Shown in pieces: positions 5,724 through 33,500 of a stretch of 64,000 nt of DNA (position 1 is its first letter; every line of letters begins with the position of its first letter). The notes under the pieces are model-generated. The model did no database searches. It was not told where the DNA came from and worked only from the letters and a program-made list of their open reading frames with translations. Made by a program: the position numbers and the translations under genes. The stretch spans positions 62,001 through 126,000 of IMG/VR virus record IMGVR_UViG_3300028840_006257, one strand, 5' to 3'.

Positions 5724-6731
5724 ATGACCGAACGTGAAACTCCGATCCACGGCGTCGGGCTAGATTGCGGGACCATGAACCTCGTCGCGGCCAGGCGGAG
5801 CAAGGAGGGCGTCGTGACGACCCGCATCAGGGACGCCTTCCTCGACCTCCCCCGGGAGCACAAGAAGATGCTCCGGCTCTCCAACGTGAACTACGTCGAG
5901 AAGGGGGAGGACCTGGTAATCGTCGGGGACGCCGCCTACGAGATGGCCAACGTCCTCGGAAAGGAGGTGAGGCGTCCGCTGCATTCCGGGGTCGTCTCTC
6001 CACAGGAGATGGAGGCCCTCGAGATCCTCGCCATCCTGATCCGACACGTCCTCAAGGAACCGGTCCAGGAGGATGAGATCTGCTACTTCTCCGTCCCTGC
6101 TCCTCCCGTGGATCAGCCGGGGAGGGACGTGATCTACCACCGCGGCATCCTGGAACGCATCATCACGGAGTGCGGCTACCAGGCTCACGCCTCGAGCGAG
6201 GCGCTGGCCATCATCTACTCCGAGTGCGCACAGGACCAGTTCAGCGGCATCGGCATCTCCTTCGGCAGCGGCCTGTCGAACGTCACGCTCGCCATCAACA
6301 CGGTCGAGGGGCTCAGCTTCTCGGTCGCCAGGGCGGGCGACTGGCTCGATCGCGGCGCGGCCAGCAGCACGGACCTCACGCGGGCTCGGATGTGCACTCT
6401 CAAGGAGAAGGGCCTCAACCTGATGCAACCCGGAGGACGCGAGGAGGAGGCGCTGTGCGTCTACTACAAGTCCCTCGTCGAGTACGTGCTCGACCACATC
6501 GCGAGCGAGTTCGACAAGATCAAGGGTCGCTTCGCGCTGCCCCACCCGATCCCCATCGTGGTCTCGGGAGGCACGAGCAAGGCCGGGGGTTTCCTCGAGT
6601 TCTTCACGCGGGTCTTCGAGGAGAAGCGCCGGAAGTTCCCCATCGAGGTCAGCGAGGTCCGGGCCGCGAAGGAGCCGCTCGACGCCGTCGCCAGGGGGCT
6701 GCTCGTCCAGGCCCTCCAGGAATATGAGTAG
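5724..6731 (+). CDS. Actin-fold (MreB/ParM/FtsA superfamily) ATPase
   Basis: ATG 5724; phosphate-1 GLDCGTMNL, connect-1 SEALAII, phosphate-2 GISFGSGLSNV, adenosine IVVSGGTS, connect-2 PLDAVARG; 335 aa. Confidence 0.85.
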   Translation: MTERETPIHGVGLDCGTMNLVAARRSKEGVVTTRIRDAFLDLPREHKKMLRLSNVNYVEKGEDLVIVGDAAYEMANVLGKEVRRPLHSGVVSPQEMEALEILAILIRHVLKEPVQEDEICYFSVPAPPVDQPGRDVIYHRGILERIITECGYQAHASSEALAIIYSECAQDQFSGIGISFGSGLSNVTLAINTVEGLSFSVARAGDWLDRGAASSTDLTRARMCTLKEKGLNLMQPGGREEEALCVYYKSLVEYVLDHIASEFDKIKGRFALPHPIPIVVSGGTSKAGGFLEFFTRVFEEKRRKFPIEVSEVRAAKEPLDAVARGLLVQALQEYE

Positions 6732-7779
6732 GTCCGACGGCCTGTCGCTCTGGACGGGGACGAGGACCGACCTGTCGTGCGTCCCCGAGCGGCTCGAGGA
6801 GTACCAGCCCGTCGTCAGCTTCAGCGGCGGCAAGGACTCGGTCGCGACCACCCTCGCGCTGCGAGAGCACGAGATCGAGGCGCGGCACGTCTTCGCCGAC
6901 ACGGGCTGGGAGTCCGAGCAGACCACCGACTACGTCCGGGAGATCGGCCAGAAGCTCGGCATCCCGATAGAGGTCGTCGAGACGACGCCGCCCGAGCTCG
7001 AGCCGTGGGTCGAGGAGCTCGTCGCCGAGGCCGAGAAGCGCCTCGGTCGAAGGTTCGGCGCGCTCCCGAGGGGGATGCTGCACCGGGGAGGGACGCCGCT
7101 GAGGATCGGCCGGTGGTGCACCATCGAGTACAAGCTGCGCCCTATCAAGGCGTACCACGAACGCGTGAGCGACGAGACGGGACTAGACGTGGTCAACGTC
7201 GTGGGCGTCCGGGCCGAGGAGAGCCTGTCTAGGGCCCGGAGGGAGACGTGGTACCTCGACCGGCAGTGGGACGGCTACATGTGGCTGCCCATCCACCACT
7301 GGCGCACGGACGACGTCCTCCGCATCCACCAGAGGCACGGCATTCCCGTCAATCCCCTCTACAGGAAGGGCCACGACCGCGTCGGCTGCTACCCGTGCAT
7401 CCTCGCGCGGAAGGACGAGATCCGCCTCATCGCTCAGCTTGAGCCCGGGCGCATCGAGATGGTGCGCGAGCTCGAGCAGCTGTTCGAGAAGATCAGGACG
7501 CGCCGTAACAGGGAGCGGCCTGGGCGCTACGGCAAGGAGGATCCCGGTTTCTTCGAGGCCGTGATCGAGCGCGGCAACTCCACGGTCCCCGCGAAGATCG
7601 ACGACGTGGTGGACTGGGCGCGTACGGGACACGGCCGCAGGGTGAGGCTCACCGAGGTCCCGCCGGGCGGCGGCTGCTTCCGGTGGGGACTGTGCGAGAC
7701 GGTGGAGAGGCCCGACGATTCCGACCGGGAGTCCATCGCTGCCGTCCTGAACGAGGCCCTGGGCACCTCGAGCGAATGA
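6724..7779 (+). CDS. PAPS-reductase family (PP-loop, Fe-S) protein
   Basis: PP-loop VSFSGGKDS, VFADTGWE, RWCTIEYK, VVGVRAEES, RVGCYPCI, C-terminal GCFRWGLCE. Start overlaps the actin-like gene stop. Confidence 0.85.
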   Translation: MSRSDGLSLWTGTRTDLSCVPERLEEYQPVVSFSGGKDSVATTLALREHEIEARHVFADTGWESEQTTDYVREIGQKLGIPIEVVETTPPELEPWVEELVAEAEKRLGRRFGALPRGMLHRGGTPLRIGRWCTIEYKLRPIKAYHERVSDETGLDVVNVVGVRAEESLSRARRETWYLDRQWDGYMWLPIHHWRTDDVLRIHQRHGIPVNPLYRKGHDRVGCYPCILARKDEIRLIAQLEPGRIEMVRELEQLFEKIRTRRNRERPGRYGKEDPGFFEAVIERGNSTVPAKIDDVVDWARTGHGRRVRLTEVPPGGGCFRWGLCETVERPDDSDRESIAAVLNEALGTSSE

Positions 7780-10516: not shown

Positions 10517-13500
10517 ATGGCAAATTTCCCTGGGACCATCTACGCGCCTCCTGGCGTCTACACCCGCACCAGGTTCCAGAGCCCCGTCTCTGGCGTCCTG
10601 GCGGGCGTTCGCATCCCCGTCTTCATCGGCACCGGCAACGAGCTGCTTCAGCAGCAGGACCTCGAGGTCATTCGTGGCTCTAGCAGCTCGGTCGATCAGC
10701 AGGTCCCGCAGGAGGACGAGACCGGTCGTGCCGTCGTGAGCATCTCCGATACGGGTCAGGTGACCCTCGGGGACTTCAACGGCGCGCGACAGCGCATCCA
10801 GGTCCGCAACTTCCCGATCACGAACGGAGACGGAAGCGGGACCACCGCCACGGACCCGAGTTCCATCCTCGTGACCATCAACGGCAGGCCCGACGTGGTC
10901 CTGAGCGTGGCTCGCGCCGACATCGGCGTCATCGAGATCAGCACGGCGCCCGACCTGAACGACGACGTGCGGGTGACGTACTTCTTCAAGCGGCACGACA
11001 CGCAGATGACGGACAACGTGTCGGACCAGGTGACTCCCGAGTCGGCCATCCTCGAGGGCGCCATCGGCAACCTCTTCGAGTTCACCTCGGACGACAACGT
11101 GTTCACCGTCACGGTGGACGACGACCAGAACCAGGTCGTGACGGCCACCTTCCCGACGGGGAGCGTCTCGGCCTCGACGGTCGTCTCGCTGATCAACGGC
11201 GCCGCGGCGGGAACGTCGCTCATCGCGTCGGAGTACACGAACAACTTCGGCCTCACGGCCGTTCGCCTCGTGGCGGACCGCAACCTCCTCATCGGGAGCG
11301 GTTCGGCCAACGTCGTCCTCGGCTTCACGCAGGGCCAGGCGACGAGCCGCAACAAGAACTTCGTGACGTTCAACGGTCCCATCGTGGACGGGACGAACGG
11401 GGGCATCACGACGACAGACACGTCCAAGGTCACGGTCCGCGTGAACGGGACCCAGGTCATCCCGACCGAGCTCGACGGACGCAACCGCACCGTGACGCTG
11501 CCCTTCGCGCCGGCCGCCGGCGATCTCGTCACGATTCAGTACTACTTCAACACGTGGCAGGACACCTTCGACTACCTGGCCAACATCAACGTGACGGAGG
11601 TCCTCCGCTGCGGGATCGTGCCGGGCAACAACGACTTCATCGAGCAGGCGGACTTCGTCCTGAAGGACGACCTGATCGTGTGGGGGAGCGCTTTCCTGGT
11701 GAGCGCCGGCGTGACGAGCGTCGGGGCCCCGGCCTTCGGGCCGACGCAGATCAGCGGCCTTCTGGTCGACAACCGCTGGTTCCTGTCCGAGACGACCGTC
11801 GTCGTGGACGACACGGTCTCCCCGCCAGTCGAGAACCGTCGGCAGTTCCAGCTCCCGGCCCAACCCACGACGGGCAACGGCCGCGACACACCGCTCGGCC
11901 AGAACGTCTTCCTGTCCATCTCCAACCGGCGGGTGGACCTGCCGACCAACAACCCGAACCTCGTCAAGGCCTACTGGGGTTGGAGCGTGCAGGACGCCCT
12001 CCAGCGCGGTCCCGTGACTGTGACCGAGGTCAAGGGGTCGATCATCACCCTCGAGGAGTCCGTTCCCGTCGGAGCGGGCGTCTGGGCGACCTTCTGGTAC
12101 AACATCCTCGTCGACGAGGAGTACACGGTCCAGGTCGAGACCTCGGGACCGTCCGGCATCGGCACCTACTTCCTCTTCGACGGCGACGGAAACCCCGTCT
12201 ACACGCCGACCTTCGGGAGCAAGGGCCCCGCCATGACCGGGGTGACGATTTCGTTCCCCTCGGGCTCCGAGCTCACCCCCGACGTGCACTTCGAGGGCGG
12301 CACGAGTGGTCCCGTCGAGGAGACGGTGACGGTCCAGTTCGCGGACAAGGACGCCACCATCGCGAAGTTCACGGTCGGCGGCAGCGGTCCCTACGCGTTC
12401 GTCTCGGGCGAGTCCGACAGGGCCCGGTTCATGATCGACAGCAGCGCCCTCGCGGGCGGCACGGCCGGGATCGACCTGTCCGCGCCGCACGGCATCCAGG
12501 GACTCGGTTTCAGCGCGAGCCTCCTCGGAGAGGAGATCCAGTACGACGAGGATACCGGCACCACGACCTACGACGTCCTCGCGGGCATCAACGACGACGT
12601 GTCGATGTCCGTGGACGGCGTGGTCATCTCGGTGACGGTCCCGGCCCAGACCGGCGTGAACGCGGACGCCTACGTCGAGGCCATCAACGCCGAGGCGAAG
12701 CTGTCCGCGAACTCTCCGTACCTCGACGGCACCACCCGGTTCCTCGGGACCACGGTCGTGACCGCGGGCGAGTACGACAAGCTCGTGTTCAACTACACGG
12801 GCGTCACCAACCCCGCGACGGGCCCGGTGACCGCCGTCATCGCCCCGGGAACGTACGCCTCCCCGGCCTTCATGGCCGCGGCGGTGGACACGGCCCTGAA
12901 CACGGCCATCGCGGCCCTGCCGGCGGGGTATGCGGGCCTCGACATCGCCGTGACTGCGAACGCCGACGGACAGATGCGGTTCACCTACAAGGCGGCCGAC
13001 ACCGACCTGGGCACCTCCGCGAGCGGGACCGTCACCGAGGTGGGAGCCATCGTGGGAGACACGATCACCATCGACACGGTGACCTTGACCGGGGCTCTGA
13101 CGCAGGTTTCGGGCGGTCTCGACTTCGACACCGGGCAGGCTCGGGCGACTCTCGTGCCGACCGGCGTGGAACCCGGCGACAACTTCACGATCAACGCGGG
13201 GGGTGGCCCGATCACCATCACCGCGTTGGGCGCCCAGACCCCGGGTGGCCTGAACTTCGATGAGGGGGACCAGGCGACGGGCACTATCACCGTCTCGGGA
13301 CCAATTCCGAACGACACCGTCACGATCAACGGGATCACGCTGACGGCGCTCGGAGCTCAGACCCCGGGTGGCCTGAACTTCGACGAGGGCACGCGAGCCA
13401 CCGGCACCGCCACGCTCACCGGGGTCCAGTACGGCGACACGATCTCCATCGACACCACCGCGGTCGGGGGAGGTCCCGTCACTCTGACGGCTAGCAACAC

Positions 13501-16500
13501 GCTGACCCCGGGCGGCCTTGACTTCAACGTCGGCACGGCGGCGACGGGAAGCATTCAGCTCGTGGGCGTGCGGCCCGCGACCATCGCGCCGTTCCCGGTG
13601 ACCGCGGCCGACACCGTCACCATCGGCGGGAACGTCCTGACGGCGAACGAGGGGCCGCGCACGCCGGGCGCCGACGACTTCGACGCCGGGACCAGGGCGC
13701 TCGGGAGCGTCACGGTCGTCGTGGACGCGCTCCCGGCGACGGGCGTCCTGTACGGCGACACGATCACCGTCGGGGGCATCGCCCTCGTCGCGGACAACGT
13801 CACGACTCCGGGTGGCCTGAACTTCGACGCGGGCACCCAGGCGTTCGAGGTGCTGACCGTGCTCCTGGCTCCGGGCGTCCCGACGCCTCCCGCGGTCATC
13901 ACTATCGACGTGGGCGGCGCGGCGGGCGGACCGTTCCCGCTCATCCCGGCGGGCGGTCCGCGCACCCCGGGCGCGAACGACTACGACGAGACGCTCGGGA
14001 CCACGATGGCGATAGCGGCCGACATCGCGGCGGCGATCAACGATCCGCTCAACGTGTTCTCCGCGTTCATGAGCGCGGCCGTCGGGCCCGGTCCTTCGGA
14101 CGTGACGTTCACGTGGAACGTGCCCGGCGTGGTCGCCAACGGCATCGTGAACCTGACGGCCGATCCGATGCTCTCTCCGCTCGTCGGCTTCGCCGGCGGC
14201 GTTGGCACGGAGGTCACGACCGCGACGGCCCTCGTCACGGCGCTCAGCGATCCGCTGAACGGGCTCACGGGCCTCATCCAGGCGCACAACACCGGCGGCG
14301 TTTCCAACGTCGTGAACCTGCAGGCCCTCACCCCGGGCCTCGCGGGCAACTCGATCAGCCTCGTCTCCACGGCGCCGGCGCGGCTCGTGCCGTCGGCGGC
14401 GACCATGGCGGGCGGCGTAGGCGACGACCTCACGGCCGCAACCGACGTGCAGGCGGCGGTGAACGACGTCGCCAACTCGTTCGCCACGGCGGTGACGGCC
14501 CTCACGACCGGAGACACGGCGGCCCTCACGGCGGTCACGCCCGGAGCCGTGGGCAACCTCATCACGCTGACCACGACGGCGGCCGGGAGGTTCGTGCTGT
14601 CCGCCGGGACGCTCACGGGAGGGGTCGGCGACGACATCTCGGCGGCGACGAGCCTGGTCGCGGCAATCTCCGACGCGGGCAACGGACTCGTCGGCGGCGT
14701 CGTCGCGGACAACGCCTCGGGCACGACCAACGTCGTCACCATCGACTCGTACACGCCGGGACTGGTCGGTAACGGCGTCCTCCTGGCGGAGTCCACGGCC
14801 GGAGCTCGGATCGCGCTCTCGGGCGCCACGCTGCTCGGCGGCGTCGGCGACAACACGACGGTCGCGGCCTCCATCGCGGCGGCCATCAACGACGTCGGAA
14901 ACGGCATCGTGACCTCCGTGACGGCCCTCGCGGCCCTGGCCGTCGTCACGATGACGGCGGTGACGCCGGGCAACGCCGGAAATTTGATCGGTACCACGTC
15001 GTCAGACGCGACGCGCCTGCTCATGTCGGGCCTGACCCTCGCCGGGGGCTCGGGAACCGACCTCAGCGTCGCCACGAGCATCGTCGCGGCGATCAACGAC
15101 CCGGGCAACGGGCTCGCCGTGGACGTGATGGCCGACAACGCCAGCGGAACCTCGACCACGGTCACCGTGTGGGACCTGACTCCGGGCGTGCTCGGCAACA
15201 CGAACACCATCGCCTCGTCCACGGGCACGCGGCTCCCGGTCTCGGGCGCCAACTTCACGGGCGGCGACACGGTGGTGGGCGTGGGTTCGAACATCGTCAC
15301 CGCGATCAACGACGCGGCCAACGGCCTGAACGGAATCGTGACGGCCGACAACAGCGGGGGCACCTCGGCGGTCGTGGATGTCACGGCGGCCGTGCCGGGC
15401 CCGCAGGGGAACTTCATCGTGCTCGCCTCGAGCGACGCGGGGCGCCTCCCGGTCTCCGGCGCGACCCTCACGGGAGGTGCCGGCCTCGGCGGCGGCGTGT
15501 TCGAGTTCCTCGACGCGGCGACGGTCGCGGAGGACTTCGCGATTCTCGCGGGCCTCTCCACGGACGCGCTGCCCAGCCAGGAGCAGACCAAGGTCGTCGA
15601 CGGAGATCTCGTGCGCCGGTTCACGGCGTCGGGCAGCTCCGGGCGCCTGATCTACGACCGGCTCGTCGTCCGCAACCGCGTCGTGCCCGGCAGCGGGTCG
15701 CTCGCGGCCGAGTCTCAGGTCGACCAGACCCAGCTCGTCATCGAGGGCACGAACGCCGAGGACGAGACGGGCCTCCAGCCGAGGGCATTCGGATCGGCGG
15801 GGATCGAGGCGACGATCCGGTCCGCCTCCTTGTACGGGGAGGTGGGCTTCAAGGACGGTCAGGTGGCGTCGGGGACGTACGGGGACTCGCGCGACGGACA
15901 GCCCGCGGTGATGTTCTACGCCCAGGGTGGCATCAATCCCCAGAACAACGTGTTCAAGTTCAACATCGACGGGACGCCCGTGACGGTGGTGTTCACGGAC
16001 GGCGTCGGGGCCGCGATTCCCGCGGCCGGGAGCGCCAGCGTGCCTCTCGGTCCGGTCACGACGGCGAACACGGTCCTCGCCCAGATCCTCGCCGGGGCGG
16101 TCGGCGCCGGACTGCCAGCCTCGGTCGTGCTCCAGGAGGGCGCGGGCACCCGACTGCTGAGCGCCACCGCCACCACGGACTCCGCCGTCACGATAGGTGC
16201 CGGGAACGCGAACGACGTCCTCGGCTTCTCCGACGACGCCACGGCGGCCCGGACCCTGGTCGAGCCCGAGGTCACGGCCTCCGCGCTCATGATGCACCAC
16301 AGCGCGTCCCTCAACGACGCGCTCCTGGACTACCAGAACCCCGACGCGACGTACTTCGCAGAGCAGGCCCTCGCGGGCGTCGAGACCGACTCGAGCAACG
16401 CGCAGTTCCTCTTCATCGAGTCGCAGGCCAACAACATCGTGGGCCTCGGGGCCTCGTCCAACATTACGTTCCTCACCGCCACGAGTGACTCGTGGCTGCG

Positions 16501-17965
16501 CACGGGGACGGGAGTCGGCGTGGCGACGGGCGAGGGGGCCGCGGGCGAGAGCGGATTCCAGGGCTACTACGTCACGAGCTCGGACCCGGTCGACGGCTCG
16601 GGTTCCGCCAACACGTCGTCCCTCAACAACGGCACGGGCCAGGACGGCATCATCGGCACGACGTACCGCGACGCGGTGACGGGCCTCACCTTCACCGTCC
16701 TCGAGCGCGAGGGGGGCTCCGCCTACCCGACGGGCGCGGGGGCCTGGTTCACCTTCGAGGTGCGCAAGCTCGTCACCACGGACGCGAACATCCCGGTCAA
16801 CTCCATCCCGGGCCTCGAGATGACGGTCGCGAATACCGAGGGATCCACGATCCCGCAGGGAGACACGGCCATCGTCGAGACGTTCGACCGGGGCGGCCAG
16901 GAACCCGCGGTGGGGGACTCCTACTTCGTGACCTACAACTTCTCGAAGACGGAGGCCGACTTCGAGACGATGCTGTTCACGAATCAGCGGGCCGTGGAGG
17001 CGAACTACGGGGAGGTCAACCCGGACAACCCGGTGTCCCTCGCCGCCTACCTCGGCTTCCTGAACGGCGGGGTCGTCCTCGCCATCAAGCAGGTGCCGAA
17101 GATCCCGGGTTCGAACCAGGCGAGCACCCAGAGCTACCTCGACGCGCTCGACGACCTCAGGGGACCGCTGCCGGGAGGCGCCACGCTGGACACGATCACG
17201 CCGCTCAAGGGCGACGACGAGGACCTGTTCCTCTCCCTGTCGAACCACTGCGACATCCAGTCGAGCATCCGGTACCGCTCCGAGCGGACCGGGCTGATCG
17301 GGGTCTCGTCGGGGACGCAGCCGACGGACGTCGGCGGCATCGCGCAGCAGATCGCGAACACGCGCATCAGGCTCGTGTACCCGGACATCGTGACCCTCAC
17401 GATCCAGGACGCCCTCGGGAACGACAAGCAGTTCCTCGTGGACGGGACCTTCCTCGCGGCGGCGCTCTCGGGCAACCGAGCCGCCCCGAGGATCGACGTG
17501 GCGACCCCGTGGACGAGGGCCCGCATCGTCGGCTTCGACGAGCTCGCCCGTACCCTCGACGCGGTCGAGCAGAACCAGGTGGCCGTACAGGGCGTCACCG
17601 TCCTGGACCAGCGCGGCACGATCATCCGAGTCCGTCAGGGCCTCACGACGGACATGAGCAACATCCTCACCAAGCTCCCGACGGTCATCACCATCGCGGA
17701 CGAGGTGCAGCGCTCCGCTCGCAGGGATCTCGACAGGTTCATCGGGGTCAAGTTCCTGCCGGGCATCCTCTCGGAGATCGAGGGCCAGCTCGCGACCACC
17801 ATGAAGGCGCTCAAGAACGCCGAGATCATCGCGGCGTTCACGGGCATCCAGGCGCGGACCACCAACGACCCGACGCTGGTGGAGATCGAAGCATTTTATC
17901 AGCCGATTTTCCCGCTTTTATACATCGTTATAACCTTCAACCTTCGCAGCAACCTTGGAGGTTGA
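10517..17965 (+). CDS. Contractile tail sheath protein, greatly enlarged (2482 aa)
   Basis: N-terminal APPGVYTRT; C-terminal sheath core (VLAIKQVP...RTGLIG...RIRLVYP...VRQGLTTD...IADEVQRSARRDLDRFIG...EIEAFYQPIFPLLYIVITFNL). Tube gene lies downstream. Confidence 0.92.
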   Translation: MANFPGTIYAPPGVYTRTRFQSPVSGVLAGVRIPVFIGTGNELLQQQDLEVIRGSSSSVDQQVPQEDETGRAVVSISDTGQVTLGDFNGARQRIQVRNFPITNGDGSGTTATDPSSILVTINGRPDVVLSVARADIGVIEISTAPDLNDDVRVTYFFKRHDTQMTDNVSDQVTPESAILEGAIGNLFEFTSDDNVFTVTVDDDQNQVVTATFPTGSVSASTVVSLINGAAAGTSLIASEYTNNFGLTAVRLVADRNLLIGSGSANVVLGFTQGQATSRNKNFVTFNGPIVDGTNGGITTTDTSKVTVRVNGTQVIPTELDGRNRTVTLPFAPAAGDLVTIQYYFNTWQDTFDYLANINVTEVLRCGIVPGNNDFIEQADFVLKDDLIVWGSAFLVSAGVTSVGAPAFGPTQISGLLVDNRWFLSETTVVVDDTVSPPVENRRQFQLPAQPTTGNGRDTPLGQNVFLSISNRRVDLPTNNPNLVKAYWGWSVQDALQRGPVTVTEVKGSIITLEESVPVGAGVWATFWYNILVDEEYTVQVETSGPSGIGTYFLFDGDGNPVYTPTFGSKGPAMTGVTISFPSGSELTPDVHFEGGTSGPVEETVTVQFADKDATIAKFTVGGSGPYAFVSGESDRARFMIDSSALAGGTAGIDLSAPHGIQGLGFSASLLGEEIQYDEDTGTTTYDVLAGINDDVSMSVDGVVISVTVPAQTGVNADAYVEAINAEAKLSANSPYLDGTTRFLGTTVVTAGEYDKLVFNYTGVTNPATGPVTAVIAPGTYASPAFMAAAVDTALNTAIAALPAGYAGLDIAVTANADGQMRFTYKAADTDLGTSASGTVTEVGAIVGDTITIDTVTLTGALTQVSGGLDFDTGQARATLVPTGVEPGDNFTINAGGGPITITALGAQTPGGLNFDEGDQATGTITVSGPIPNDTVTINGITLTALGAQTPGGLNFDEGTRATGTATLTGVQYGDTISIDTTAVGGGPVTLTASNTLTPGGLDFNVGTAATGSIQLVGVRPATIAPFPVTAADTVTIGGNVLTANEGPRTPGADDFDAGTRALGSVTVVVDALPATGVLYGDTITVGGIALVADNVTTPGGLNFDAGTQAFEVLTVLLAPGVPTPPAVITIDVGGAAGGPFPLIPAGGPRTPGANDYDETLGTTMAIAADIAAAINDPLNVFSAFMSAAVGPGPSDVTFTWNVPGVVANGIVNLTADPMLSPLVGFAGGVGTEVTTATALVTALSDPLNGLTGLIQAHNTGGVSNVVNLQALTPGLAGNSISLVSTAPARLVPSAATMAGGVGDDLTAATDVQAAVNDVANSFATAVTALTTGDTAALTAVTPGAVGNLITLTTTAAGRFVLSAGTLTGGVGDDISAATSLVAAISDAGNGLVGGVVADNASGTTNVVTIDSYTPGLVGNGVLLAESTAGARIALSGATLLGGVGDNTTVAASIAAAINDVGNGIVTSVTALAALAVVTMTAVTPGNAGNLIGTTSSDATRLLMSGLTLAGGSGTDLSVATSIVAAINDPGNGLAVDVMADNASGTSTTVTVWDLTPGVLGNTNTIASSTGTRLPVSGANFTGGDTVVGVGSNIVTAINDAANGLNGIVTADNSGGTSAVVDVTAAVPGPQGNFIVLASSDAGRLPVSGATLTGGAGLGGGVFEFLDAATVAEDFAILAGLSTDALPSQEQTKVVDGDLVRRFTASGSSGRLIYDRLVVRNRVVPGSGSLAAESQVDQTQLVIEGTNAEDETGLQPRAFGSAGIEATIRSASLYGEVGFKDGQVASGTYGDSRDGQPAVMFYAQGGINPQNNVFKFNIDGTPVTVVFTDGVGAAIPAAGSASVPLGPVTTANTVLAQILAGAVGAGLPASVVLQEGAGTRLLSATATTDSAVTIGAGNANDVLGFSDDATAARTLVEPEVTASALMMHHSASLNDALLDYQNPDATYFAEQALAGVETDSSNAQFLFIESQANNIVGLGASSNITFLTATSDSWLRTGTGVGVATGEGAAGESGFQGYYVTSSDPVDGSGSANTSSLNNGTGQDGIIGTTYRDAVTGLTFTVLEREGGSAYPTGAGAWFTFEVRKLVTTDANIPVNSIPGLEMTVANTEGSTIPQGDTAIVETFDRGGQEPAVGDSYFVTYNFSKTEADFETMLFTNQRAVEANYGEVNPDNPVSLAAYLGFLNGGVVLAIKQVPKIPGSNQASTQSYLDALDDLRGPLPGGATLDTITPLKGDDEDLFLSLSNHCDIQSSIRYRSERTGLIGVSSGTQPTDVGGIAQQIANTRIRLVYPDIVTLTIQDALGNDKQFLVDGTFLAAALSGNRAAPRIDVATPWTRARIVGFDELARTLDAVEQNQVAVQGVTVLDQRGTIIRVRQGLTTDMSNILTKLPTVITIADEVQRSARRDLDRFIGVKFLPGILSEIEGQLATTMKALKNAEIIAAFTGIQARTTNDPTLVEIEAFYQPIFPLLYIVITFNLRSNLGG
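13016..15483 (+). repeat. Seven N-half repeats (ending TPGGLNFDxG-like) followed by seven C-half repeats (AAIND...TPG..GN...TLxGG) within the sheath
   Basis: N-half loop motifs near 13105, 13238, 13361, 13505, 13661, 13805 and 13964. C-halves contain AINDPLN, ALSDPLN, AVNDVAN, AISDAGN, AINDVGN, AINDPGN and AINDAAN. Confidence 0.9.
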
Positions 17966-18008: not shown

Positions 18009-20606
18009 GTGACCCCTGAACAACTCGAACAGGTTCTTGCGGCGTTTGCGTCCGACGACGCGGCCGCCGTGATTGCGAAATGCACAGGTGTGCCACGGGG
18101 TCACGTCTACAAGCTCTGGAAAGAACAGTTCGGACCGCGAGCTCTTCGGGATCGGGGCAACCGACTTCGCGGCCTGGCGAAGAGTCGTTCGGGAAACTCG
18201 GCCAGAACTGAGGTTCGCGACGCCGCCATCGCTGCCTTCGAAGAGGGGGAGGCGATGAAGGCCGTCGCGCTCCGGTTGGGGGTTCACTACACGCAGATTC
18301 GTGAGTGGTGGGTTGAGGTTTACGGGGTGGAGACGGTGGCCGAGCGGGGCCGTGCCCTTCAGAGGACTCGAACTCGTGCTAACCATGAGAGGCTCAGGGG
18401 AAAAGCGCGAAAGGTCCGCGTTATCTCGGTACCTTGTGACGCGTGCGGTCGGGATCTTGAGGTTTCTACCATCTCGGCGGCTAAAAGTTCGCGAATCGTG
18501 TGTTCCTCCTGCGAGCAGTCGGAACGAGGGGCCGACACCGCGTGTCCCGTCTGTGGTCGACTCTGCGTCGGGAAAAGGGGACTCGCGAGCCACTTAGGGA
18601 GCGCCAAAGATGAGGTCCATCGCGAGTATCTTCGGCACCAGGAAGAAGAGCGTCTTGGAGAGGAGGGTCACGGGCACGTGGTGTGCCTTGAGTGCGGCCA
18701 TCGTGCTCGGAATCTGTGGAAGCATCTTGAGGCGGAACACGAGATGACACCCTCCGAGTATGTCGGAAAGTGGCCGGGTGCGTGCTGGCGTACCGAGGCG
18801 GCAGAACGAGCACGAGTGCGACGGTCCTCTGAGGCACGTTCGGCCAGCGGCTTTGGAAAGGGGACGCGGAAGATCGTGGCATGTCCCCAGTGTTCAACGG
18901 AGGTCGAGGTCTCTCGTTTTGCGGGGCCGCTTCACGATCTACGCTGTGACGAGTGCAGGGCAGAGGACGAACTGAAGACATGGTGTGGGAAGAGCGAACC
19001 CGAGGACTACGTCTCCTGTCGAGAGTGTGGATTTCGGGCAGAATTTCTCATCTCTCATGTCCGATCCGCACACGACCTTGCAGAGTACGTGACTCGTCAT
19101 CCGGATGCGCCGTTCACGGCGTGTCGGGCTGGTCAGCGGAAATCACCGAGTACGAAGCTCGTGCTAACGAAGGAGCAGCTGGTGCCCTTCATGGATGAGG
19201 GGCGCGTTGTCGCGGCCGCCGCGGCGAGGGCCTTCGGGTGCGCGCAGTTTCAAATTCGTCGGGCGTGCAACGAGCTGGGGCTGCAAACCCGACGGCGGCT
19301 CGCCTGGCAGAAAGCGGTCCTGGATCGTGCCGCGTCGTATCTGGGCGTCGGCTACAAGTCGGAGTGGACCGATTCAAGGATCGTCAACGAGGCAACCGGC
19401 CGGAAGCTTCACTACGATGGCTTCTTTCCTTCCCGGAACTTGATCATCGAGGCTCACGGGGACCAGCATTTCTTCTTCATCGAAGCGTGGCACCGCACCT
19501 ACGAGGAGTTCGAACGCCTGCGCGAGTTGGATCGCTTCAAGCTCAGGCGCGCTCAGGAGCTCGGGTTTGCCGTGAAGGTCGTCCGGTACGGGGACGCGAT
19601 TCACGAGAGAGGCTTCTGGAGACGGCTCCTGGAGGACGACCGGGCGCTGTGGGCCAACAAGTCGGAGAGCGAGCGCCGGGACGACGTGGAGAGGGTGCTG
19701 CGGGAACTGAGGGTCTCGGGATTCCCCGACATCCTTCCCTCCCCGAAGACACGCGCCGAATTCACGAAACTCCAGAGACAGACGATCTATCTGGACTCGT
19801 CGGGAACGATCCGTCCACAGACGACGCGAGGCACGACGGCGTGTGCCTCTTTTTTTCCGAACAGGTACCGGGCCCGTTACAAGGGGGCGCCGAGCGTGCT
19901 GGAGGCGTGGGACGACGACGACAGGTTGCGCAGGGCAGTTCGGGTACAGATGGAGGCGGGACATCCCACCACCCCTCACCGTGTGCTGCGGGCCCTCCAG
20001 ATGATCTGTCGAACGCCCTCCGTGTTTCGTCCCGGAGTCGCCAAATACGTCTGTCAGACCTACTGTCGCGAGGGGGGGACCGTCTGGGATCCGTGTGCCG
20101 GCTACGGGGGGCGTCTTTTCGGCGCGATGGCAACGCACGTGGGGGCCTACCTGGGCACGGACGTCGAGCCCGAGATCGTCGAGGGAAATCGGAGATTGGC
20201 GCAGGAGATCGGCGTCTCCGATCGATGTCAAGTGGTTCAGGCGGCGGCCGAAGAGTTCGATCCCGAGTCCCCCCTCGATTTGGTATTCACGTCTCCACCG
20301 TACTACGACCTTGAAAGCTACGGGTCGCGGTCCGATGCTCGGGCCTACTCCGACGTGGGCGAGTGGCTTGAGCGTTTCCTGGTGCCCGTGATCAACAAGG
20401 GCGCCGAGCATCTCAGGTCCGGCGCCTACTTGATCCTGAATCTTCCGGCCAAACCCCGCGCCGGCGTCGTCCTTGCCGACGAGGCCGTCAAGATCGCCGT
20501 ACGAGCTGGTCTCGGGGTTCAGCCCGTCGTTTTCATGCCCGTCAGGCGCCTTCGGACCTCTCGATCTGCATGGAAGGACCCGCTAGTCGTTTTTCGCAAG
20601 CCGTAG
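18009..20606 (+). CDS. Fusion: HTH and Zn-finger array, Vsr/DUF559-like PD-(D/E)xK endonuclease, and amino-DNA methyltransferase (SPPY)
   Basis: Repeated CxxC/C2H2 units (CPVCG...SHL, CLECG...KHLEAEH, CRECG...SHVRSAH). Nuclease motif LHYDGFF...IIEAHGDQHF (19407-19472). MTase motif I DPCAGYGG (20088) and motif IV FTSPPYY (20286-20306). Codon usage is more AT-rich than the flanks. Confidence 0.85.
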   Translation: MTPEQLEQVLAAFASDDAAAVIAKCTGVPRGHVYKLWKEQFGPRALRDRGNRLRGLAKSRSGNSARTEVRDAAIAAFEEGEAMKAVALRLGVHYTQIREWWVEVYGVETVAERGRALQRTRTRANHERLRGKARKVRVISVPCDACGRDLEVSTISAAKSSRIVCSSCEQSERGADTACPVCGRLCVGKRGLASHLGSAKDEVHREYLRHQEEERLGEEGHGHVVCLECGHRARNLWKHLEAEHEMTPSEYVGKWPGACWRTEAAERARVRRSSEARSASGFGKGTRKIVACPQCSTEVEVSRFAGPLHDLRCDECRAEDELKTWCGKSEPEDYVSCRECGFRAEFLISHVRSAHDLAEYVTRHPDAPFTACRAGQRKSPSTKLVLTKEQLVPFMDEGRVVAAAAARAFGCAQFQIRRACNELGLQTRRRLAWQKAVLDRAASYLGVGYKSEWTDSRIVNEATGRKLHYDGFFPSRNLIIEAHGDQHFFFIEAWHRTYEEFERLRELDRFKLRRAQELGFAVKVVRYGDAIHERGFWRRLLEDDRALWANKSESERRDDVERVLRELRVSGFPDILPSPKTRAEFTKLQRQTIYLDSSGTIRPQTTRGTTACASFFPNRYRARYKGAPSVLEAWDDDDRLRRAVRVQMEAGHPTTPHRVLRALQMICRTPSVFRPGVAKYVCQTYCREGGTVWDPCAGYGGRLFGAMATHVGAYLGTDVEPEIVEGNRRLAQEIGVSDRCQVVQAAAEEFDPESPLDLVFTSPPYYDLESYGSRSDARAYSDVGEWLERFLVPVINKGAEHLRSGAYLILNLPAKPRAGVVLADEAVKIAVRAGLGVQPVVFMPVRRLRTSRSAWKDPLVVFRKP

Positions 20607-20659
20607 ATCTCTCCGCTTTTCCCCCTATCGGGCCCCCTCGGCATCAGGAGGGCACTGTC

Positions 20660-21055
20660 ATGCGGGACGACCTGTACGCGGGCTGGCATCTGCTCTTCGA
20701 TGCCTTCGTAGACCCCGAGCACGCCGAGCGTCTGGACGACGCCGAGTTTCTTGAACGGTTATTCCGAGATCTCGTGGAAGTGCTCGACATGGAGATCCTC
20801 GGGGAACCGGCGTTCAAGAAGATTCCCTGCGATCCCTCCAGGCTGGACACGGAGCATGACGAGGGCGGCGTGACGGGTACCGTCATCGTCACCACGAGCC
20901 ACCTGAGCATCCACACGTGGCCCCTGCGGAAACGCTTCTGCCTCGACGTGTTCTCGTGCAAGCAGTTCGATCACCTCGCGGTCGAGAGGCTCGTGAGGGC
21001 ACGCCTCCGCGTCGAGAGGCGGTCGAGTCGCTGGATCCCACGGACGTGGCCGTGA
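20660..21055 (+). CDS. speD: S-adenosylmethionine decarboxylase proenzyme family (class 1B)
   Basis: GWHLLFD...GGVTGTVIVTTSHLSIHTWP...LDVFSC; RBS AGGAGG before ATG 20660; 131 aa. Confidence 0.85.
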   Translation: MRDDLYAGWHLLFDAFVDPEHAERLDDAEFLERLFRDLVEVLDMEILGEPAFKKIPCDPSRLDTEHDEGGVTGTVIVTTSHLSIHTWPLRKRFCLDVFSCKQFDHLAVERLVRARLRVERRSSRWIPRTWP

Positions 21056-30572: not shown

Positions 30573-33500
30573 ATGGCGGGCATCCAGGACAGGCCCTACG
30601 CGGGCACGTGGAAGCTCAACAACCGGACGGTGGTGAAGTACACCCCGGACGCGCTCGTGTTTATCAACGGGGACACGTCGCTGCCCGGCTGCCCGCGCTG
30701 TCGGGGACGCCTCGACATCCAGCGGTACGTCACGTCTATTGGTGTCGAGGCCGGAACCGAGCCGGGATCCCACTCCGCGAACATCAGCCTCACGCTTCCG
30801 CGGGTTCAAGGACAGCAAGTCTTCATCGACGGCTACAACATCCTCCGCGCGGGCCTTGAAGTTCACGTCTTCTTCCGCGGGTACTTCCCGGTGCGGGGGA
30901 TGTTCAAGCACCTGGCCGATCCTCAGTCCGGGCGCAACGTGAACTTCCCGAACCCGACGGACGACGACGAGCTGGATCTCTCCAAGTATGCGAGCTACCC
31001 CTACTACCCCGTGTTCCACGGGGTGGTCACGCAGGTCACCTACCAGTACGCCGACGGCTTCTACAACGGGAGCCTCAACTGCGCGTCCCTGCTCCACTTC
31101 TGGAAGTTCCAAAACGTCGTGGCGGCTGGCGCGTGGCTAGCTCAGGGCAAACTCCCTGAGGGCGCCGAGGCACGACCCACGCTCTACGGGCACAACTTCT
31201 CGAACATGCACCCGTTCTCGATCATCTACACCCTGTATCGAGACGTGGCGGGTGCGGCGGCGGGCCTCGACTACGCTCTTGACGAGGAGTCCAACCTCGC
31301 CGCGACGACTAGTCGAAGAGGGCAGTCGCTTTATCATCAGATCTCCATCTACTGGGAGCAGCGTTTCAAGACGAGGGTCCAGAGCCTGCGGATGTACGGG
31401 GTCAATGGAAGGCTCTTCAACGCGGCCCAGCAGGCGTGGTTCGGGAAGGCGGGAAAAGAGGAGATGGAGGGGTTCATCTCTAACCCGACGTACAACGATC
31501 CGCAGACGACACGAACCGAGCATGACCCTCTTGCTAGTCGTTTGGACGTTGCCAAGGCTCTCGGACTCCAGGACCAAGGCGCAGACTTGATCTGGTCGCC
31601 GCTCATCGGTCAAGACGGCGAACTCGCCAATCTCTCGGTCCTGGACATGTGGGCATTCAATTTCCAGCTCAGCGAGTTGGGAGTCACGAACAAGTGGGTG
31701 ACGACCTACGAGACGAAGATGGACGTCGCTCAGGCGGTGATGGATGCCACGGGTTACGAGTTCTATCAGGACGTTGACGGGGACCTCGTGTTCAAGCCCC
31801 CGTTCTGGAACCTCGACACGTCGCCCAACCGCTACTACCGGCTCGAGGATCAGGACATCATCAACATCAGCTTCGTCGAGAAGGAACCACAGGCGACGTA
31901 CATCATCGTGCGTGGCGTCTGGATCGCCGGCGTGTCGGATGCGACCTCCAACAGTGGGCCGCAGCACAAGCGGGCCATGTACATCGACTACAGGCTCGTG
32001 GCGCAGTTCGGCTGGCGTCCCGCGCCGTCCGTCGATATCACCTACCAGACGGACCCGAAGGTCCTGTTCTGGATGGCGGTGGGACGTCTCGATGCGACGA
32101 ACGTCGATACTTTCGGCGCATCCGTGACAATCCCGATTCGACCGGAACTACGTCCTGGATATCCGGTCTACATACCGTTCGTCGATTCCTACTACTACAT
32201 CAGCCAGATGAGTCACCAGTTCACTTTCGGGGGGCGCCCGACGACGAGTCTGGTGCTGACCTGTCGCCGACGCAAGTGGCATGCTCCGGGGATTCTGGAA
32301 GCGGCTCCCGAAGGCGAGAGCGCGATCAAGTTGATTCATCTCGATCGTCCCGACTTGCCACCTCGTCCCCTCGAGATCTTCGACAACGGGATCTCAAGGA
32401 TCGCGGGGTTCCCCAACGTCGTCATGGCACTCGACCCTCGCAAGATGAACGCCAGCTTCTCACTCGTGGGGGCCGGAATCGACTACTTCGATTCCGTGGA
32501 CGGCCCGGCGGATCTCCTGTTCGACCTGCTCGTGCGTGATGTGGCCGATCTCGAGGCATTTGAGACCGTGGCACCGGAGCCTGATGCGGATGGTAGGGAA
32601 ACACCGACCGACCCGACGAAGCCTACGAGGCTGGGTCTGCGATACGGTCCGAAGGACGAGCTCATCGAGTTCGATTTGAAGGACCTGCAATCGGGTTTCC
32701 AGGCGTTGAAGGATGTCCGTGAAGATCTCAAGGCGACGGAGCGGCGGATCGAGGACGTGACGCTTGCCGAGATCATGGCACGATCTTCCGAAAACGCCTT
32801 CGATCCTGCTCGAGGAGGGGTAGATCCCCCCAGCACGAGCATAGATCGTCGGGATTCCCTGAGCGAACTCGATCGACTCTCCCAGGAGGAGCAGACGGCC
32901 CTTGAGAACATTCGCAAGAACCTGGGCAACAATAGGAACATACAGCTCCTTGCGCTCATTTTCGACGCCCTTCAACCTTCCGGAAACAAGGCCATCCGTC
33001 GCAGGGTCGGCGGGATTCCAGGCTCCGACGTCACGCTGTCCTACTTCGACAGCCTCACACACCTGAAGTCGCAGTACCTCGCGGGGGCACTACCAGGTCA
33101 CTACCGTTACTTCTCCTGCTCGCATCCCGATCCGGAAATGCAGGGAATGCCGATCATCGAGTGGGATGACGGTGAGCGTCCTCCGTCGCGGACTCCCTCG
33201 ACGGGCCAGACACGACAGAACGGACCCGGCGCCCAAACGCCCGGCACCCCCATATCTACAGATACCAATCGCAACAGACGGCTGAGAGGAGAGGCAGCCA
33301 ACCTACAGGGACGACTTGAAGAGAGTGGAATAACCTGGGTTGGCGCGGATAGTCTGTTGAGGGAACGTGATGAGGGATCGAGCACCGACGCCGAAAGCTC
33401 GGAAGAGGAGGTTCGTAATGCTTCGTTGACGAAGGATATCGCCGAGAATCTGACCAATGTTTCGGAAGCTGGCCAGGTGCTGGCTGACCGTCTAGCTGGT

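What the first reader, a model, noticed from the sequence alone, without database searches (positions are those of the whole stretch)
13016..15483. Seven-level nested (matryoshka) domain stack inside the tail sheath
Seen: the sheath has exactly seven tandem N-half repeats (A(T/S)GTxT...GDT(I/V)TI...LTA...TPGGLNFDxG) and then exactly seven tandem C-half repeats (xxxxxAxx(I/L)xxAIND...V(T/M)A...TPG..GN.I.L.S...RL..SG.TLxGG). Only the innermost pair is contiguous (…TPGANDYDE-TLGTTMAIAADIAAAIND…, about 13829-14204), and it reads as one complete ~120-aa beta-rich domain. Each outer N-half ends at FxxG and each C-half resumes with T/D-x-x-x-A-A/T. This is what recursive insertion of the domain into the same loop of its previous copy would give (N1..N7-C7..C1). 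Known: T4 gp18-type sheaths have nested insertion domains, but those are different folds and few. Inference: each subunit would carry a rigid radial stalk of seven domains, making a densely bristled tail used for adhesion, shielding or receptor sensing. It also implies an unusual nested mode of domain amplification.
Basis: partly seen in the sequence, partly recalled or inferred. Interest (0 to 1): 0.88.

Follow-up and report, generated by a model that had tools for sequence, protein, structure and literature searches.

The report
Seven-fold self-nested domain in phage sheath
A 2,482-residue tail sheath protein of an uncultured large phage carries one ~115-residue domain inserted into itself seven times like Russian dolls, which is probably the deepest and most regular case of a domain nested in itself yet seen and would give each sheath subunit a long seven-domain stalk.

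Summary
ORF 10517-17965 (+) has seven N-type units (aa 832-1158) and then seven C-type units (aa 1159-1656). Its C-terminal 380 residues match tail sheath families.

The nested reading (N1-C7 … N7-C1, C units numbered in order of appearance) is supported by independent tests:
- **Homologues.** N+C is one contiguous domain in some homologues, single or in tandem (NC)2, (NC)3 and (NC)5. Others have N3C3, and all 60 complete close orthologues have N7C7. No complete array has unequal counts.
- **Covariation.** Across 49 orthologues, mirror pairing ranks 2nd of 5,040 possible pairings.
- **Similarity and evolutionary rate.** Both favour the mirror pairing, each ranking in the top 1%.
- **AlphaFold2, whole region.** Mean pLDDT is 89.8.
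- **AlphaFold2, truncation.** In a construct N1-N7+C1-C3, only N5-N7 stay above 90. N1-N4 drop to about 75, with the step at the N4/N5 boundary.

The domain resembles the outer domains of solved sheaths. It belongs to a large unnamed phage domain family that also forms stand-alone N2C2, N3C3 and N4C4 proteins.

Function (a radial stalk for adhesion or sheath bracing) is inferred only. The closest architectural precedents are cyanobacterial RNA polymerase Si3 and flagellin. Verdict: a new variant of a known kind.

The parts
10517..17965 (+). Tail sheath ORF, 2,482 aa
   Evidence: ORF list and translation. About 120 homologues of 1,624-2,489 aa were listed, from 178 hits. The window equals IMG/VR contig IMGVR_UViG_3300017963_000244.
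13010..13135 (+). N1 (aa 832-873), N half of level 1, the outermost and proximal domain; partner C7
   Evidence: Covariation block N1xC7 is the row maximum.
13136..13267 (+). N2 (aa 874-917), level 2; partner C6
13268..13390 (+). N3 (aa 918-958), level 3; partner C5
   Evidence: N3xC5 is the sharpest covariation block.
13391..13534 (+). N4 (aa 959-1006), level 4; partner C4
   Evidence: It loses pLDDT when C4-C7 are removed.
13535..13690 (+). N5 (aa 1007-1058), level 5; partner C3
   Evidence: It stays at pLDDT 90-96 in the truncation that keeps C1-C3.
13691..13834 (+). N6 (aa 1059-1106), level 6; partner C2
13835..13990 (+). N7 (aa 1107-1158), N half of the innermost, distal domain; contiguous with C1
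   Evidence: A junction-spanning match to the independent whole-domain HMM covers aa 1141-1210.
13991..14206 (+). C1 (aa 1159-1230), C half of the innermost domain (level 7)
14207..14422 (+). C2 (aa 1231-1302), C half of level 6
14423..14629 (+). C3 (aa 1303-1371), C half of level 5
14630..14848 (+). C4 (aa 1372-1444), C half of level 4
14849..15055 (+). C5 (aa 1445-1513), C half of level 3
15056..15265 (+). C6 (aa 1514-1583), C half of level 2
15266..15484 (+). C7 (aa 1584-1656), C half of level 1 (outermost)
12971..13009 (+). Host-domain strand before the nest (aa 819-831, …MRFTYKAADTDLG)
   Evidence: In homologues without the array this strand runs directly into the GYLEF strand (consensus).
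15485..15520 (+). Host-domain strand after the nest (aa 1657-1668, LGGGVFEFLDAA)
16796..17944 (+). Conserved C-terminal sheath region (aa 2094-2476)
   Evidence: tblastn to annotated tail sheaths, with Bacillus phage G gp178 at 2e-26, plus Mycobacterium, Gordonia and Rhodococcus phages. The C-terminal 421 aa match phrog_2839 'tail sheath' at 2.1e-25 and phrog_279 'tail sheath' at 1.1e-7.

Best explanation
The ORF is the contractile-tail sheath protein of a large uncultured phage. In a surface loop of one of its outer domains it carries a ~115-residue alpha/beta module, which I call the NC domain. The N half is four short strands. The C half is a 12-residue helix followed by strands and a short helix. 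This domain has been inserted recursively into the loop between its own N and C halves, so the chain runs N1…N7 and then C1…C7. Seven complete domains form by mirror pairing: N1+C7 (outermost, next to the sheath) through N7+C1 (innermost in sequence, farthest from the sheath). Each level joins the next through two chain crossings. The seven domains should therefore form a fairly stiff stalk, roughly 15-20 nm long by analogy with other seven-domain rods, projecting from every sheath subunit. Shown here: the repeat anatomy, the fact that N+C is a single domain elsewhere, equal N and C counts, mirror-specific covariation, similarity and rate correlation, and AlphaFold2 behaviour. Inferred: the physical stalk, and its role in adhesion to cell-surface or matrix polymers and/or lateral bracing of a long sheath. 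The NC domain's N|C loop appears to be a general self-insertion site, because the same family also forms N2C2, N3C3 and N4C4 proteins outside sheaths. The confidence given applies to the nested topology; the proposed function is much less certain.
For: 1. **N+C is one contiguous domain in homologous sheaths.** At least 18 have a single NC unit. P0083 has (NC)2, P0075 has (NC)3, and P0062, P0067 and P0087 have (NC)5. P0119 is N3C3, and all 60 complete close orthologues are N7C7.
2. **Independent profile.** A whole-domain HMM with no window sequence in it matches the window protein as split N-part hits, one junction-spanning hit and six C-part hits.
3. **Covariation.** Across 49 unique orthologues (Neff 38), block-corrected MI between N_i and C_j ranks the mirror pairing 2nd of 5,040. 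The best pairing differs only by swapping the partners of N4 and N5. Parallel pairing ranks about 4,800.
4. **Similarity.** Distance matrices among N units and among C units correlate at r=0.83 under the mirror mapping (rank 52 of 5,040) and at -0.14 under parallel.
5. **Rate.** Per-unit conservation of N_i and C_(8-i) correlates at r=0.86 (rank 49 of 5,040).
6. **AlphaFold2, whole region.** For aa 815-1672 with a 43-sequence alignment, mean pLDDT is 89.8 and pTM 0.52, and all N units are at about 90-95.
7. **AlphaFold2, truncation.** With the same alignment and aa 832-1371 (N1-N7+C1-C3), N5-N7 and C1-C3 stay mostly at 88-97 (two loops dip to 78-81, and the N7 loop is also low, at 70, in the full model). 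N1-N4 fall to 57-86, with the step at model residues 171-180, which is the N4/N5 boundary, and some strands are lost.
8. **No linker.** N7 runs straight into C1, so a parallel N_i-C_i pairing is sterically impossible.
9. **Fold.** Foldseek's best PDB hits are outer domains of solved sheaths: cyanophage A-1(L) 8kee at E 2e-4 and prob 1.0, then phage Milano and Pa193.
10. **Sheath identity and context.** Baseplate_J and Phage_base_V genes lie downstream.
11. **Other nests.** Stand-alone N2C2, N3C3 and N4C4 proteins exist in the same domain family.
Against: No atomic coordinates or PAE were available to me, so inter-half contacts were not read directly. The AlphaFold2 evidence is indirect (pLDDT, DSSP, pTM) and rests on one truncation. 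The alignment is shallow (43 sequences, 52-75% identity). The covariation optimum is mirror with N4 and N5 partners swapped, not the exact mirror. N2-C6 and N6-C2 are only weakly supported individually. Shared duplication history could produce the similarity and rate correlations without physical pairing. That would still mean the halves were copied together. Pfam sheath models do not hit the protein, and neither sequence search against PDB chains found anything relevant. Nothing tests rigidity, orientation or function of the stalk. No virion or isolate exists.
Confidence: 0.85

Rival explanations
1. The N units and C units fold separately. The seven N units would form a tandem beta array or solenoid, and the seven C units a tandem string of small alpha/beta domains. 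Equal counts would then be coincidental or due to some other constraint.
For: The two unit types are segregated in sequence. N units alone still get moderate pLDDT (about 72-86) in the truncation model.
Against: N+C is a contiguous unit in single and tandem homologues. Counts are always equal: 7/7 in 60 proteins, 3/3 in P0119, and 2/2, 3/3 and 4/4 in the stand-alone proteins. Covariation is mirror-specific. Partnerless N units lose 15-20 pLDDT points, with the step exactly at N4/N5.
Confidence: 0.05
2. The halves pair, but between neighbouring sheath subunits. This would be an intermolecular domain swap that zips the lattice together, not seven intramolecular domains.
For: Sheath subunits are known to exchange strands in their core ('handshake'; my own knowledge). 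Nothing computed here models the assembled lattice.
Against: The AlphaFold2 monomer gives a confident self-contained solution. Stand-alone N2C2 to N4C4 proteins have the same architecture outside sheaths. The covalent N7-C1 junction forces at least the innermost domain to be intramolecular.
Confidence: 0.05
3. The nest exists but is functionally neutral. It would be a selfish or tolerated expansion of a self-inserting module in a permissive surface loop, with no adaptive role for the stalk.
For: The array is absent from 85 related sheaths. It sits at three different insertion sites in different lineages. It evolves faster (62% mean identity) than the sheath core (75%).
Against: Exactly seven levels are kept in all 60 complete orthologues despite 55-80% sequence divergence. 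Every unit keeps its motifs and open reading frame. That implies purifying selection on about 825 extra residues per subunit, in a protein made in hundreds of copies per virion.
Confidence: 0.1

Closest known systems
Multi-domain ('type 3') phage tail sheath proteins such as T4 gp18 and jumbo-phage sheaths (Evseev et al. 2022, PMC9230969)
   Same: A conserved core is built from the N and C termini. Extra outer domains face away from the tube, and some are built from an N-side segment plus a returning C-side segment. Larger genomes have more domains. The proposed roles are adhesion or tail stabilisation.
   Different: Those sheaths have up to 'five and more' domains, described mostly as Ig-like, and no repeated self-nesting is reported. 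Here one non-Ig alpha/beta domain is nested in itself seven times, and the protein is 2,482 aa. The largest two-domain sheath in that survey is 713 aa.
Si3 insertion of cyanobacterial RNA polymerase beta' (SBHM domains; PMC10895346, PMC13114784)
   Same: Copies of one fold are inserted into each other recursively to build an elongated rod (150 Å for seven SBHMs). It is described as a six-level nested architecture.
   Different: It is an unrelated fold and protein. Its topology is irregular: SBHM-1, -6, -7 and -8 are continuous and only SBHM-2 to -5 are discontinuous, with branching. Here the nest is strictly linear (N7C7), seven deep, always at the same loop, and sits in a virion protein.
Flagellin and FliD outer domains (D1-D2-D3)
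   Same: The hairpin topology is the same: each outer domain is formed by an outgoing and a returning segment, projecting radially from a helical polymer. Foldseek gives weak matches to FliD D2-D3 and to flagellin outer domains (E 0.08-1).
   Different: In flagellin the nested domains have different folds and are at most about four deep (my own knowledge). The matches here are too weak to claim homology.
Outer domain of ~500-aa sheaths with solved structures (cyanophage A-1(L) 8kee, Agrobacterium phage Milano 8foy/8fqc, Pseudomonas phage Pa193 9b42)
   Same: These are the best structural matches to the repeat model (E 2e-4, prob 1.0, 137-144 aligned columns, rmsd 4.7-5.8 Å). The NC domain therefore looks like an ordinary sheath surface domain.
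   Different: Those sheaths carry a single copy. Sequence identity is only 14-17%, and homology is not established.
Unnamed NC-domain family (overlaps phrog_28344, 'unknown function')
   Same: The window's units match a 116-position profile of this family. The family has 854 representative clusters at E≤1e-3, in proteins of 163-3,800 aa. Four of ten sampled members match phrog_28344.
   Different: Most members have one copy or tandem copies, up to 9. Nested forms are rare, and none seen is deeper than 4 outside this sheath clade.

Membership tests
Contractile tail sheath protein | C-terminal sheath domain recognisable by sheath family profiles | tested here: met
   The C-terminal 421 aa hit phrog_2839 'tail sheath' (2.1e-25, profile 208-566 of 581) and phrog_279 'tail sheath' (1.1e-7). 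tblastn matches 222 phage records, and every listed row that carries annotation calls the gene a tail sheath or its product.
Contractile tail sheath protein | Match to the curated Pfam sheath models (Phage_sheath_1, _1N, _1C) | tested here: not met
   No Pfam hit for the whole protein or its pieces. The intermediate, Bacillus phage G gp178, hits Phage_sheath_1C only below threshold (20.3 bits against a cut-off of 26.9). The clade is too divergent for Pfam, so this weakens but does not overturn the PHROG result.
Contractile tail sheath protein | Core fold built jointly from the N and C termini, with strand exchange between subunits | not tested
The N-terminal PGVY-type motif is present, but that recognition rests on memory only.
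Contractile tail sheath protein | Located in a contractile-tail gene module | tested here: met
   Phage_base_V spike-like ORF at 35988-38453 and Baseplate_J ORF at 55193-58741, on the same strand. In Tunturiibacter phage Tunturi_5 the homologue is annotated as tail sheath and lies next to a tail terminator. No tube gene was identified.
Nested (discontinuous) domain-insertion architecture | Each domain is formed by an N-side segment and a returning C-side segment that enclose the next domain | tested here: met
   N+C is contiguous in homologues. Mirror pairing ranks 2nd of 5,040 by covariation. The AlphaFold2 truncation shows the pLDDT step at N4/N5. A direct contact map was not available.
Recursive self-insertion of one fold (as in cyanobacterial RNAP Si3) | Host and insert belong to the same domain family at every level | tested here: met
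   All 7 N and all 7 C units match the same N and C HMMs and a single whole-domain profile.
Recursive self-insertion of one fold (as in cyanobacterial RNAP Si3) | SBHM fold or homology to RNAP Si3 | tested here: not met
   No RNA polymerase chain appears among the 50 listed Foldseek PDB matches. This is an analogy of architecture only.
NC-domain family (unnamed; phrog_28344 region) | Full-length match to the 116-position profile built from contiguous units | tested here: met
   The window's N7-C1 aligns end to end with the contiguous units.

The most novel reading that the evidence does not exclude
The NC domain is a self-nesting building block. Its N|C loop accepts another copy of itself, or a whole pre-formed nest, so phages can build doubly connected rods of set length: k = 1, 2, 3, 4 and 7 levels are seen, in sheaths and in stand-alone proteins. 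In this clade the result is a sheath carrying a seven-domain stalk on every subunit. That would be a brush-like tail several times wider than an ordinary sheath, with the fastest-evolving domain at the tip acting as a distributed adhesin. It would also be the deepest regular self-nested protein architecture known.
Probability: 0.4. Interest if true: 0.88.

Novelty: new variant of a known kind. Interest (0 to 1): 0.8.

Why it matters
Domain insertion is common, but deep recursion of one domain into itself is very rare. A recent survey of 2.7 million classified domains gives as its example of complex organisation six irregular levels in cyanobacterial RNA polymerase (PMC13114784). This case is cleaner and deeper: seven levels, strictly linear and always at the same loop. 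It also has a natural comparison series in homologues, with no array, one unit, tandem 2/3/5, nested 3 and nested 7, plus stand-alone nests of 2 to 4. That series makes several questions testable:
- How nested repeats arise.
- How a chain whose first and last 40 residues of an 825-residue stretch must meet manages to fold.
- Why nesting was chosen over tandem repetition, for example for stiffness from double connections.

For phage biology it predicts an unseen tail morphology in a widespread group of large soil and sediment phages. For protein engineering it suggests a natural scaffold for rigid rods of chosen length.

Tried and rejected
- **Family searches on the whole protein.** Pfam and PHROGs found nothing. 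Pfam on the pieces gave only noise. The first attempt used out-of-frame coordinates and failed.
- **PDB by sequence.** The C-terminal third gave only a chance filamin hit. A 78-sequence profile of the family and Bacillus phage G gp178 each gave nothing.
- **Tandem DNA repeats.** Tandem Repeats Finder found no array, so the units are old and diverged, not a recent expansion or an assembly artefact.
- **Raw covariation.** The uncorrected N×C block matrix was dominated by a high-variation block (N4-N7 × C1-C3) and was not interpretable until a block-level correction was applied.
- **Order of layer addition.** I hoped the tree of mirror-paired units would show it. It shows only that levels 1-6 mostly group together, except part of level 5, and that level 7 sits apart on a long branch. 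Support is too weak to read a growth order.
- **Contacts from the AlphaFold2 model.** Coordinates are not exposed to scripts, so I used a truncation design with pLDDT as the read-out.
- **The ~510-aa proteins.** I considered that those carrying one NC domain might be ordinary sheaths. One hits Pectinesterase just below Pfam's cut-off, and two of the proteins first scored as nFc carry a methyltransferase domain, so that idea was dropped.
- **Cluster look-up.** It gave no names for the stand-alone nest proteins.
- **Misassembly.** Rejected, because 60 independent contigs share the N7C7 architecture.

Full report
**1. What is in the window**

Window 10517-17965 (+) is one 2,482-codon ORF in a 65-70% G+C region. 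Residues 832-1158 are seven copies of a 41-52-residue unit, N1-N7. Each has the motif A(T/S)GTxT…GDT(I/V)TI…LTA…TPGGLNFDxG.

Residues 1159-1656 are seven copies of a 69-73-residue unit. Each has the motif xxAAxxIAAAIND…VTA…TPG..GN.I.L.S..RL..SG.TLTGG.

- HMMs of the units find exactly 7+7 hits, and nowhere else in the six-frame translation of the window.
- At DNA level the copies are 60-80% identical. The TPGGLNFD motif recurs seven times at 123-159 nt spacing.
- Tandem Repeats Finder sees no array, so the repeats are ancient.

**2. Is it a sheath?**

Pfam and PHROGs give nothing for the whole protein, and sequence searches against PDB chains give nothing relevant. The positive evidence is:
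- The C-terminal 421 residues match phrog_2839 'tail sheath' (2.1e-25) and phrog_279 'tail sheath' (1.1e-7).
- tblastn matches residues about 2094-2476 to annotated sheaths of Bacillus phage G (2e-26) and of Mycobacterium, Gordonia and Rhodococcus myophages.
- The protein matches more fully to the annotated sheath of Tunturiibacter phage Tunturi_5 and to an unannotated 485-kb uncultured phage.
- A spike-like ORF (Phage_base_V) and a Baseplate_J ORF lie downstream on the same strand.
- The window is IMG/VR contig IMGVR_UViG_3300017963_000244. Relatives lie on viral contigs of up to 618 kb.

I accept the sheath assignment. Two caveats remain: the curated Pfam sheath models do not reach this clade, and the core fold was not modelled.

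**3. The homologue series**

A search of 5.8 billion proteins gave 178 relatives, of which 120 were listed. IMG/VR gave 70 loci. Counting N and C units with HMMs gave:

| Architecture | Proteins |
|---|---|
| N7C7 | all 60 complete close orthologues (55-80% identical) |
| N3C3 | P0119 |
| (NC)5 | P0062, P0067, P0087 |
| (NC)3 | P0075 |
| (NC)2 | P0083 |
| single NC | 18 clear cases, plus 17 where only C is recognised |
| no array | 85 sheaths of about 1,625-1,830 aa |

Four conclusions follow:
- N followed by C is one contiguous unit in nature.
- That unit can be repeated either in tandem or in the N^kC^k pattern.
- No complete array has unequal N and C counts. The only N-only strings are contigs truncated inside the gene (L013, L016, L026).
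- Arrays sit at three different loops of the host domain in different lineages, so the module has entered the sheath more than once.

A whole-domain HMM was built only from tandem units of other phages. It matches the window protein as N-part hits, one hit across the N7/C1 junction, and six C-part hits. It matches P0119 as two N-part hits, one full-length hit and two C-part hits.

**4. Which N goes with which C?**

Five lines of evidence bear on this.

- **Geometry.** N7 runs into C1 without a linker, and neighbouring units abut. A parallel pairing (N1-C1 and so on) would need a return connection about seven domains long, which does not exist.
- **Similarity.** The distance matrix among N units correlates with that among C units at r=0.83 under the mirror mapping (rank 52 of 5,040 permutations). 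Under the parallel mapping it is -0.14.
- **Rate.** Conservation of N_i across orthologues tracks that of C_(8-i), with r=0.86 and rank 49 of 5,040.
- **Covariation.** I computed normalised, APC-corrected mutual information across 49 unique orthologues, summarised it per N_i×C_j block and corrected it at block level. The mirror pairing ranks 2nd of 5,040 for three different cut-offs. The top permutation differs only by swapping the partners of N4 and N5. Parallel pairing ranks about 4,800. N1-C7, N3-C5, N5-C3 and N7-C1 are individually clear. N2-C6 and N6-C2 are weak.
- **AlphaFold2.** Residues 815-1672 with a 43-sequence alignment give mean pLDDT 89.8 and pTM 0.52, and every N unit is at about 90-95. 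Coordinates are not exposed, so I designed a truncation whose outcome differs between the models: N1-N7+C1-C3 (aa 832-1371) with the same alignment.
  - Nesting predicts that only N5-N7 find partners.
  - Parallel pairing predicts that N1-N3 find partners.
  - Autonomous N domains predict no change.
  - Result: N1-N4 fall to 57-86 and lose strands. The pLDDT steps up to 90-97 at model residues 171-180, which is the N4/N5 boundary at 175/176. N5-N7 and C1-C3 stay mostly at 88-97, with two loops dipping to 78-81. pTM is 0.68.

The truncation gives the nested prediction. It also argues against the N4/N5-swapped alternative, in which N5 would have been left without a partner.

**5. What the domain is**

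By DSSP on the model, each N half has three or four short strands. Each C half has a 12-13-residue helix, then strands and a short helix.

- Foldseek's best PDB matches are the outer domains of solved sheaths: cyanophage A-1(L) 8kee at E 2e-4 and prob 1.0, then phage Milano and Pa193. Weak matches go to FliD and flagellin outer domains.
- Against predicted viral structures, the best hits are uncharacterised phage proteins and Baseplate-J-like proteins.
- A profile of contiguous units finds 854 representative clusters (262 at E≤1e-10) among 1.84 billion proteins, in proteins of 163-3,800 aa.
- The family has no Pfam model. Four of ten sampled members overlap phrog_28344, 'unknown function'.
- Among the best 148 proteins, most carry one copy or tandem copies, up to nine.
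- Three stand-alone proteins are nests: P0161 (302 aa, N2C2), P0129 (406 aa, N3C3) and P0121 (521 aa, N4C4). Their innermost unit closely resembles the window's N7-C1. P0121 lies in a phage-like contig.

Self-nesting is thus a recurring property of this domain family and is not confined to this one gene.

**6. How it probably works**

Shown: seven complete domains are encoded as a linear nest in a surface loop of a sheath protein. The number seven is kept under clear constraint in all 60 complete orthologues.

Inferred:
- Each level is tied to the next by two chain crossings, so the stack should be stiffer than a tandem string. It should project away from the tube-facing core, as all extra sheath domains described so far do (PMC9230969).
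- By analogy with the 150 Å rod of seven SBHM domains in cyanobacterial Si3 (PMC10895346), the stalk would be roughly 15-20 nm long.
- The nest evolves faster than the core (62% against 75% mean identity). Within it, the distal levels 5-7 are less conserved (56-60%) than the proximal levels 1-4 (60-72%). That fits an exposed, interaction-prone tip.

I therefore favour a role in adhesion to cell-surface or matrix polymers, with lateral bracing of the sheath as a second possibility. Neither was tested.

How nests grow is unresolved. One route is insertion of a copy into the N|C loop. Another is insertion of a pre-formed nest into a resident NC domain. In the unit tree, levels 1-6 mostly group together (part of level 5 falls outside) and level 7 sits apart on a long branch. 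The stand-alone nests share the level-7-like core. Both hint that a nest with this core was wrapped by further layers or moved as a unit.

**7. Comparison with what is known**

- Sheaths with extra, sometimes discontinuous domains are well known (PMC9230969). So is the nested hairpin topology of flagellin (my own knowledge).
- Recursive insertion of one fold into itself is documented for cyanobacterial RNA polymerase Si3. There four of eight SBHMs are discontinuous (PMC10895346), and a 2026 survey of 2.7 million domains calls it a six-level architecture and uses it as the example of complex organisation (PMC13114784).
- My literature searches found no description of a self-nested sheath domain or of this protein family.

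This case is therefore a new variant of a known kind. It uses the same principle, but goes deeper, is strictly regular, sits in a virion polymer, and comes with a natural series of tandem and nested relatives.

**8. Limits**

- No coordinates or PAE were available, and only one truncation could be run.
- The alignment is shallow.
- Pairwise support for levels 2 and 6 is weak.
- The sheath core was not modelled.
- There is no isolate and no image of the virion.
- Intermolecular swapping in the assembled lattice cannot be excluded by these computations.

Noticed in passing
P0121, P0129, P0161; locus L077:3221-4786: These are stand-alone small proteins made almost entirely of a nest: N4C4 (521 aa), N3C3 (406 aa) and N2C2 (302 aa). 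Their innermost unit closely resembles the window's N7-C1. P0121 lies in a phage-like contig beside ribonucleotide reductase and a RecD-like helicase.
   Followed up: partly
Homologous sheaths P0001/P0051/P0044 vs P0062/P0075 vs P0119/P0083: NC arrays occupy three different loops of the same host domain in different lineages: between the RFT…G and GYLEF strands, after YLEFV, or before the GRLxF strand. This implies repeated independent acquisition.
   Followed up: partly
window 1739-4468 (+): A 909-aa ORF contains an intein (Hint/Intein_splicing plus a LAGLIDADG homing endonuclease domain). The host protein was not identified.
   Followed up: no
window 18009-20606 (+): An 865-aa ORF directly after the sheath combines ROS/MucR, an HTH and a methyltransferase-like domain. 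In homologous loci L071-L073 a 227-254-aa ORF follows the sheath instead, so this may be an inserted element.
   Followed up: no
window 20570-21055 (+) and 6724-7779 (+): There are auxiliary-metabolism-like genes in the structural region: an S-adenosylmethionine decarboxylase-like ORF (phrog_3125, 7e-18) and a PAPS reductase-like ORF (PF01507, 5.5e-28).
   Followed up: no
window 39056-50077 (+) and 30573-35984 (+): Two giant ORFs of 3,673 aa and 1,803 aa lie in the tail module and have no Pfam hit. They flank the Phage_base_V spike-like ORF (35988-38453) and lie upstream of the Baseplate_J ORF (55193-58741).
   Followed up: no
sheath aa 214-253, 682-716, 786-819 (window about 11157-11276, 12560-12665, 12873-12974): The helix part of the NC profile (the 'A..I..AIN' motif) gives very weak matches (i-E 0.04-1) in three other outer regions of the same sheath. 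This hints that other outer domains, including the host domain, may be distant relatives of the NC fold.
   Followed up: no
window 13010-15484, across 49 orthologues: There is a conservation gradient along the nest. Proximal levels 1-4 are 60-72% identical among orthologues and distal levels 5-7 are 56-60%. The whole nest (62%) evolves faster than the sheath C-terminal core (75%).
   Followed up: yes
BFVD entry A0A6J7VL40: A 614-aa uncharacterised protein of an uncultured phage matches the seven-level model over 679 alignment columns (E 2.8e-26). It probably holds another multi-copy NC array. I did not check whether it is nested or tandem.
   Followed up: no
P0218, P0231: Two ~510-aa proteins scored as 'nFc' also carry an N-terminal methyltransferase domain that overlaps the putative outer N hit. 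That N hit may be spurious, or the NC domain may occur in non-structural proteins.
   Followed up: no
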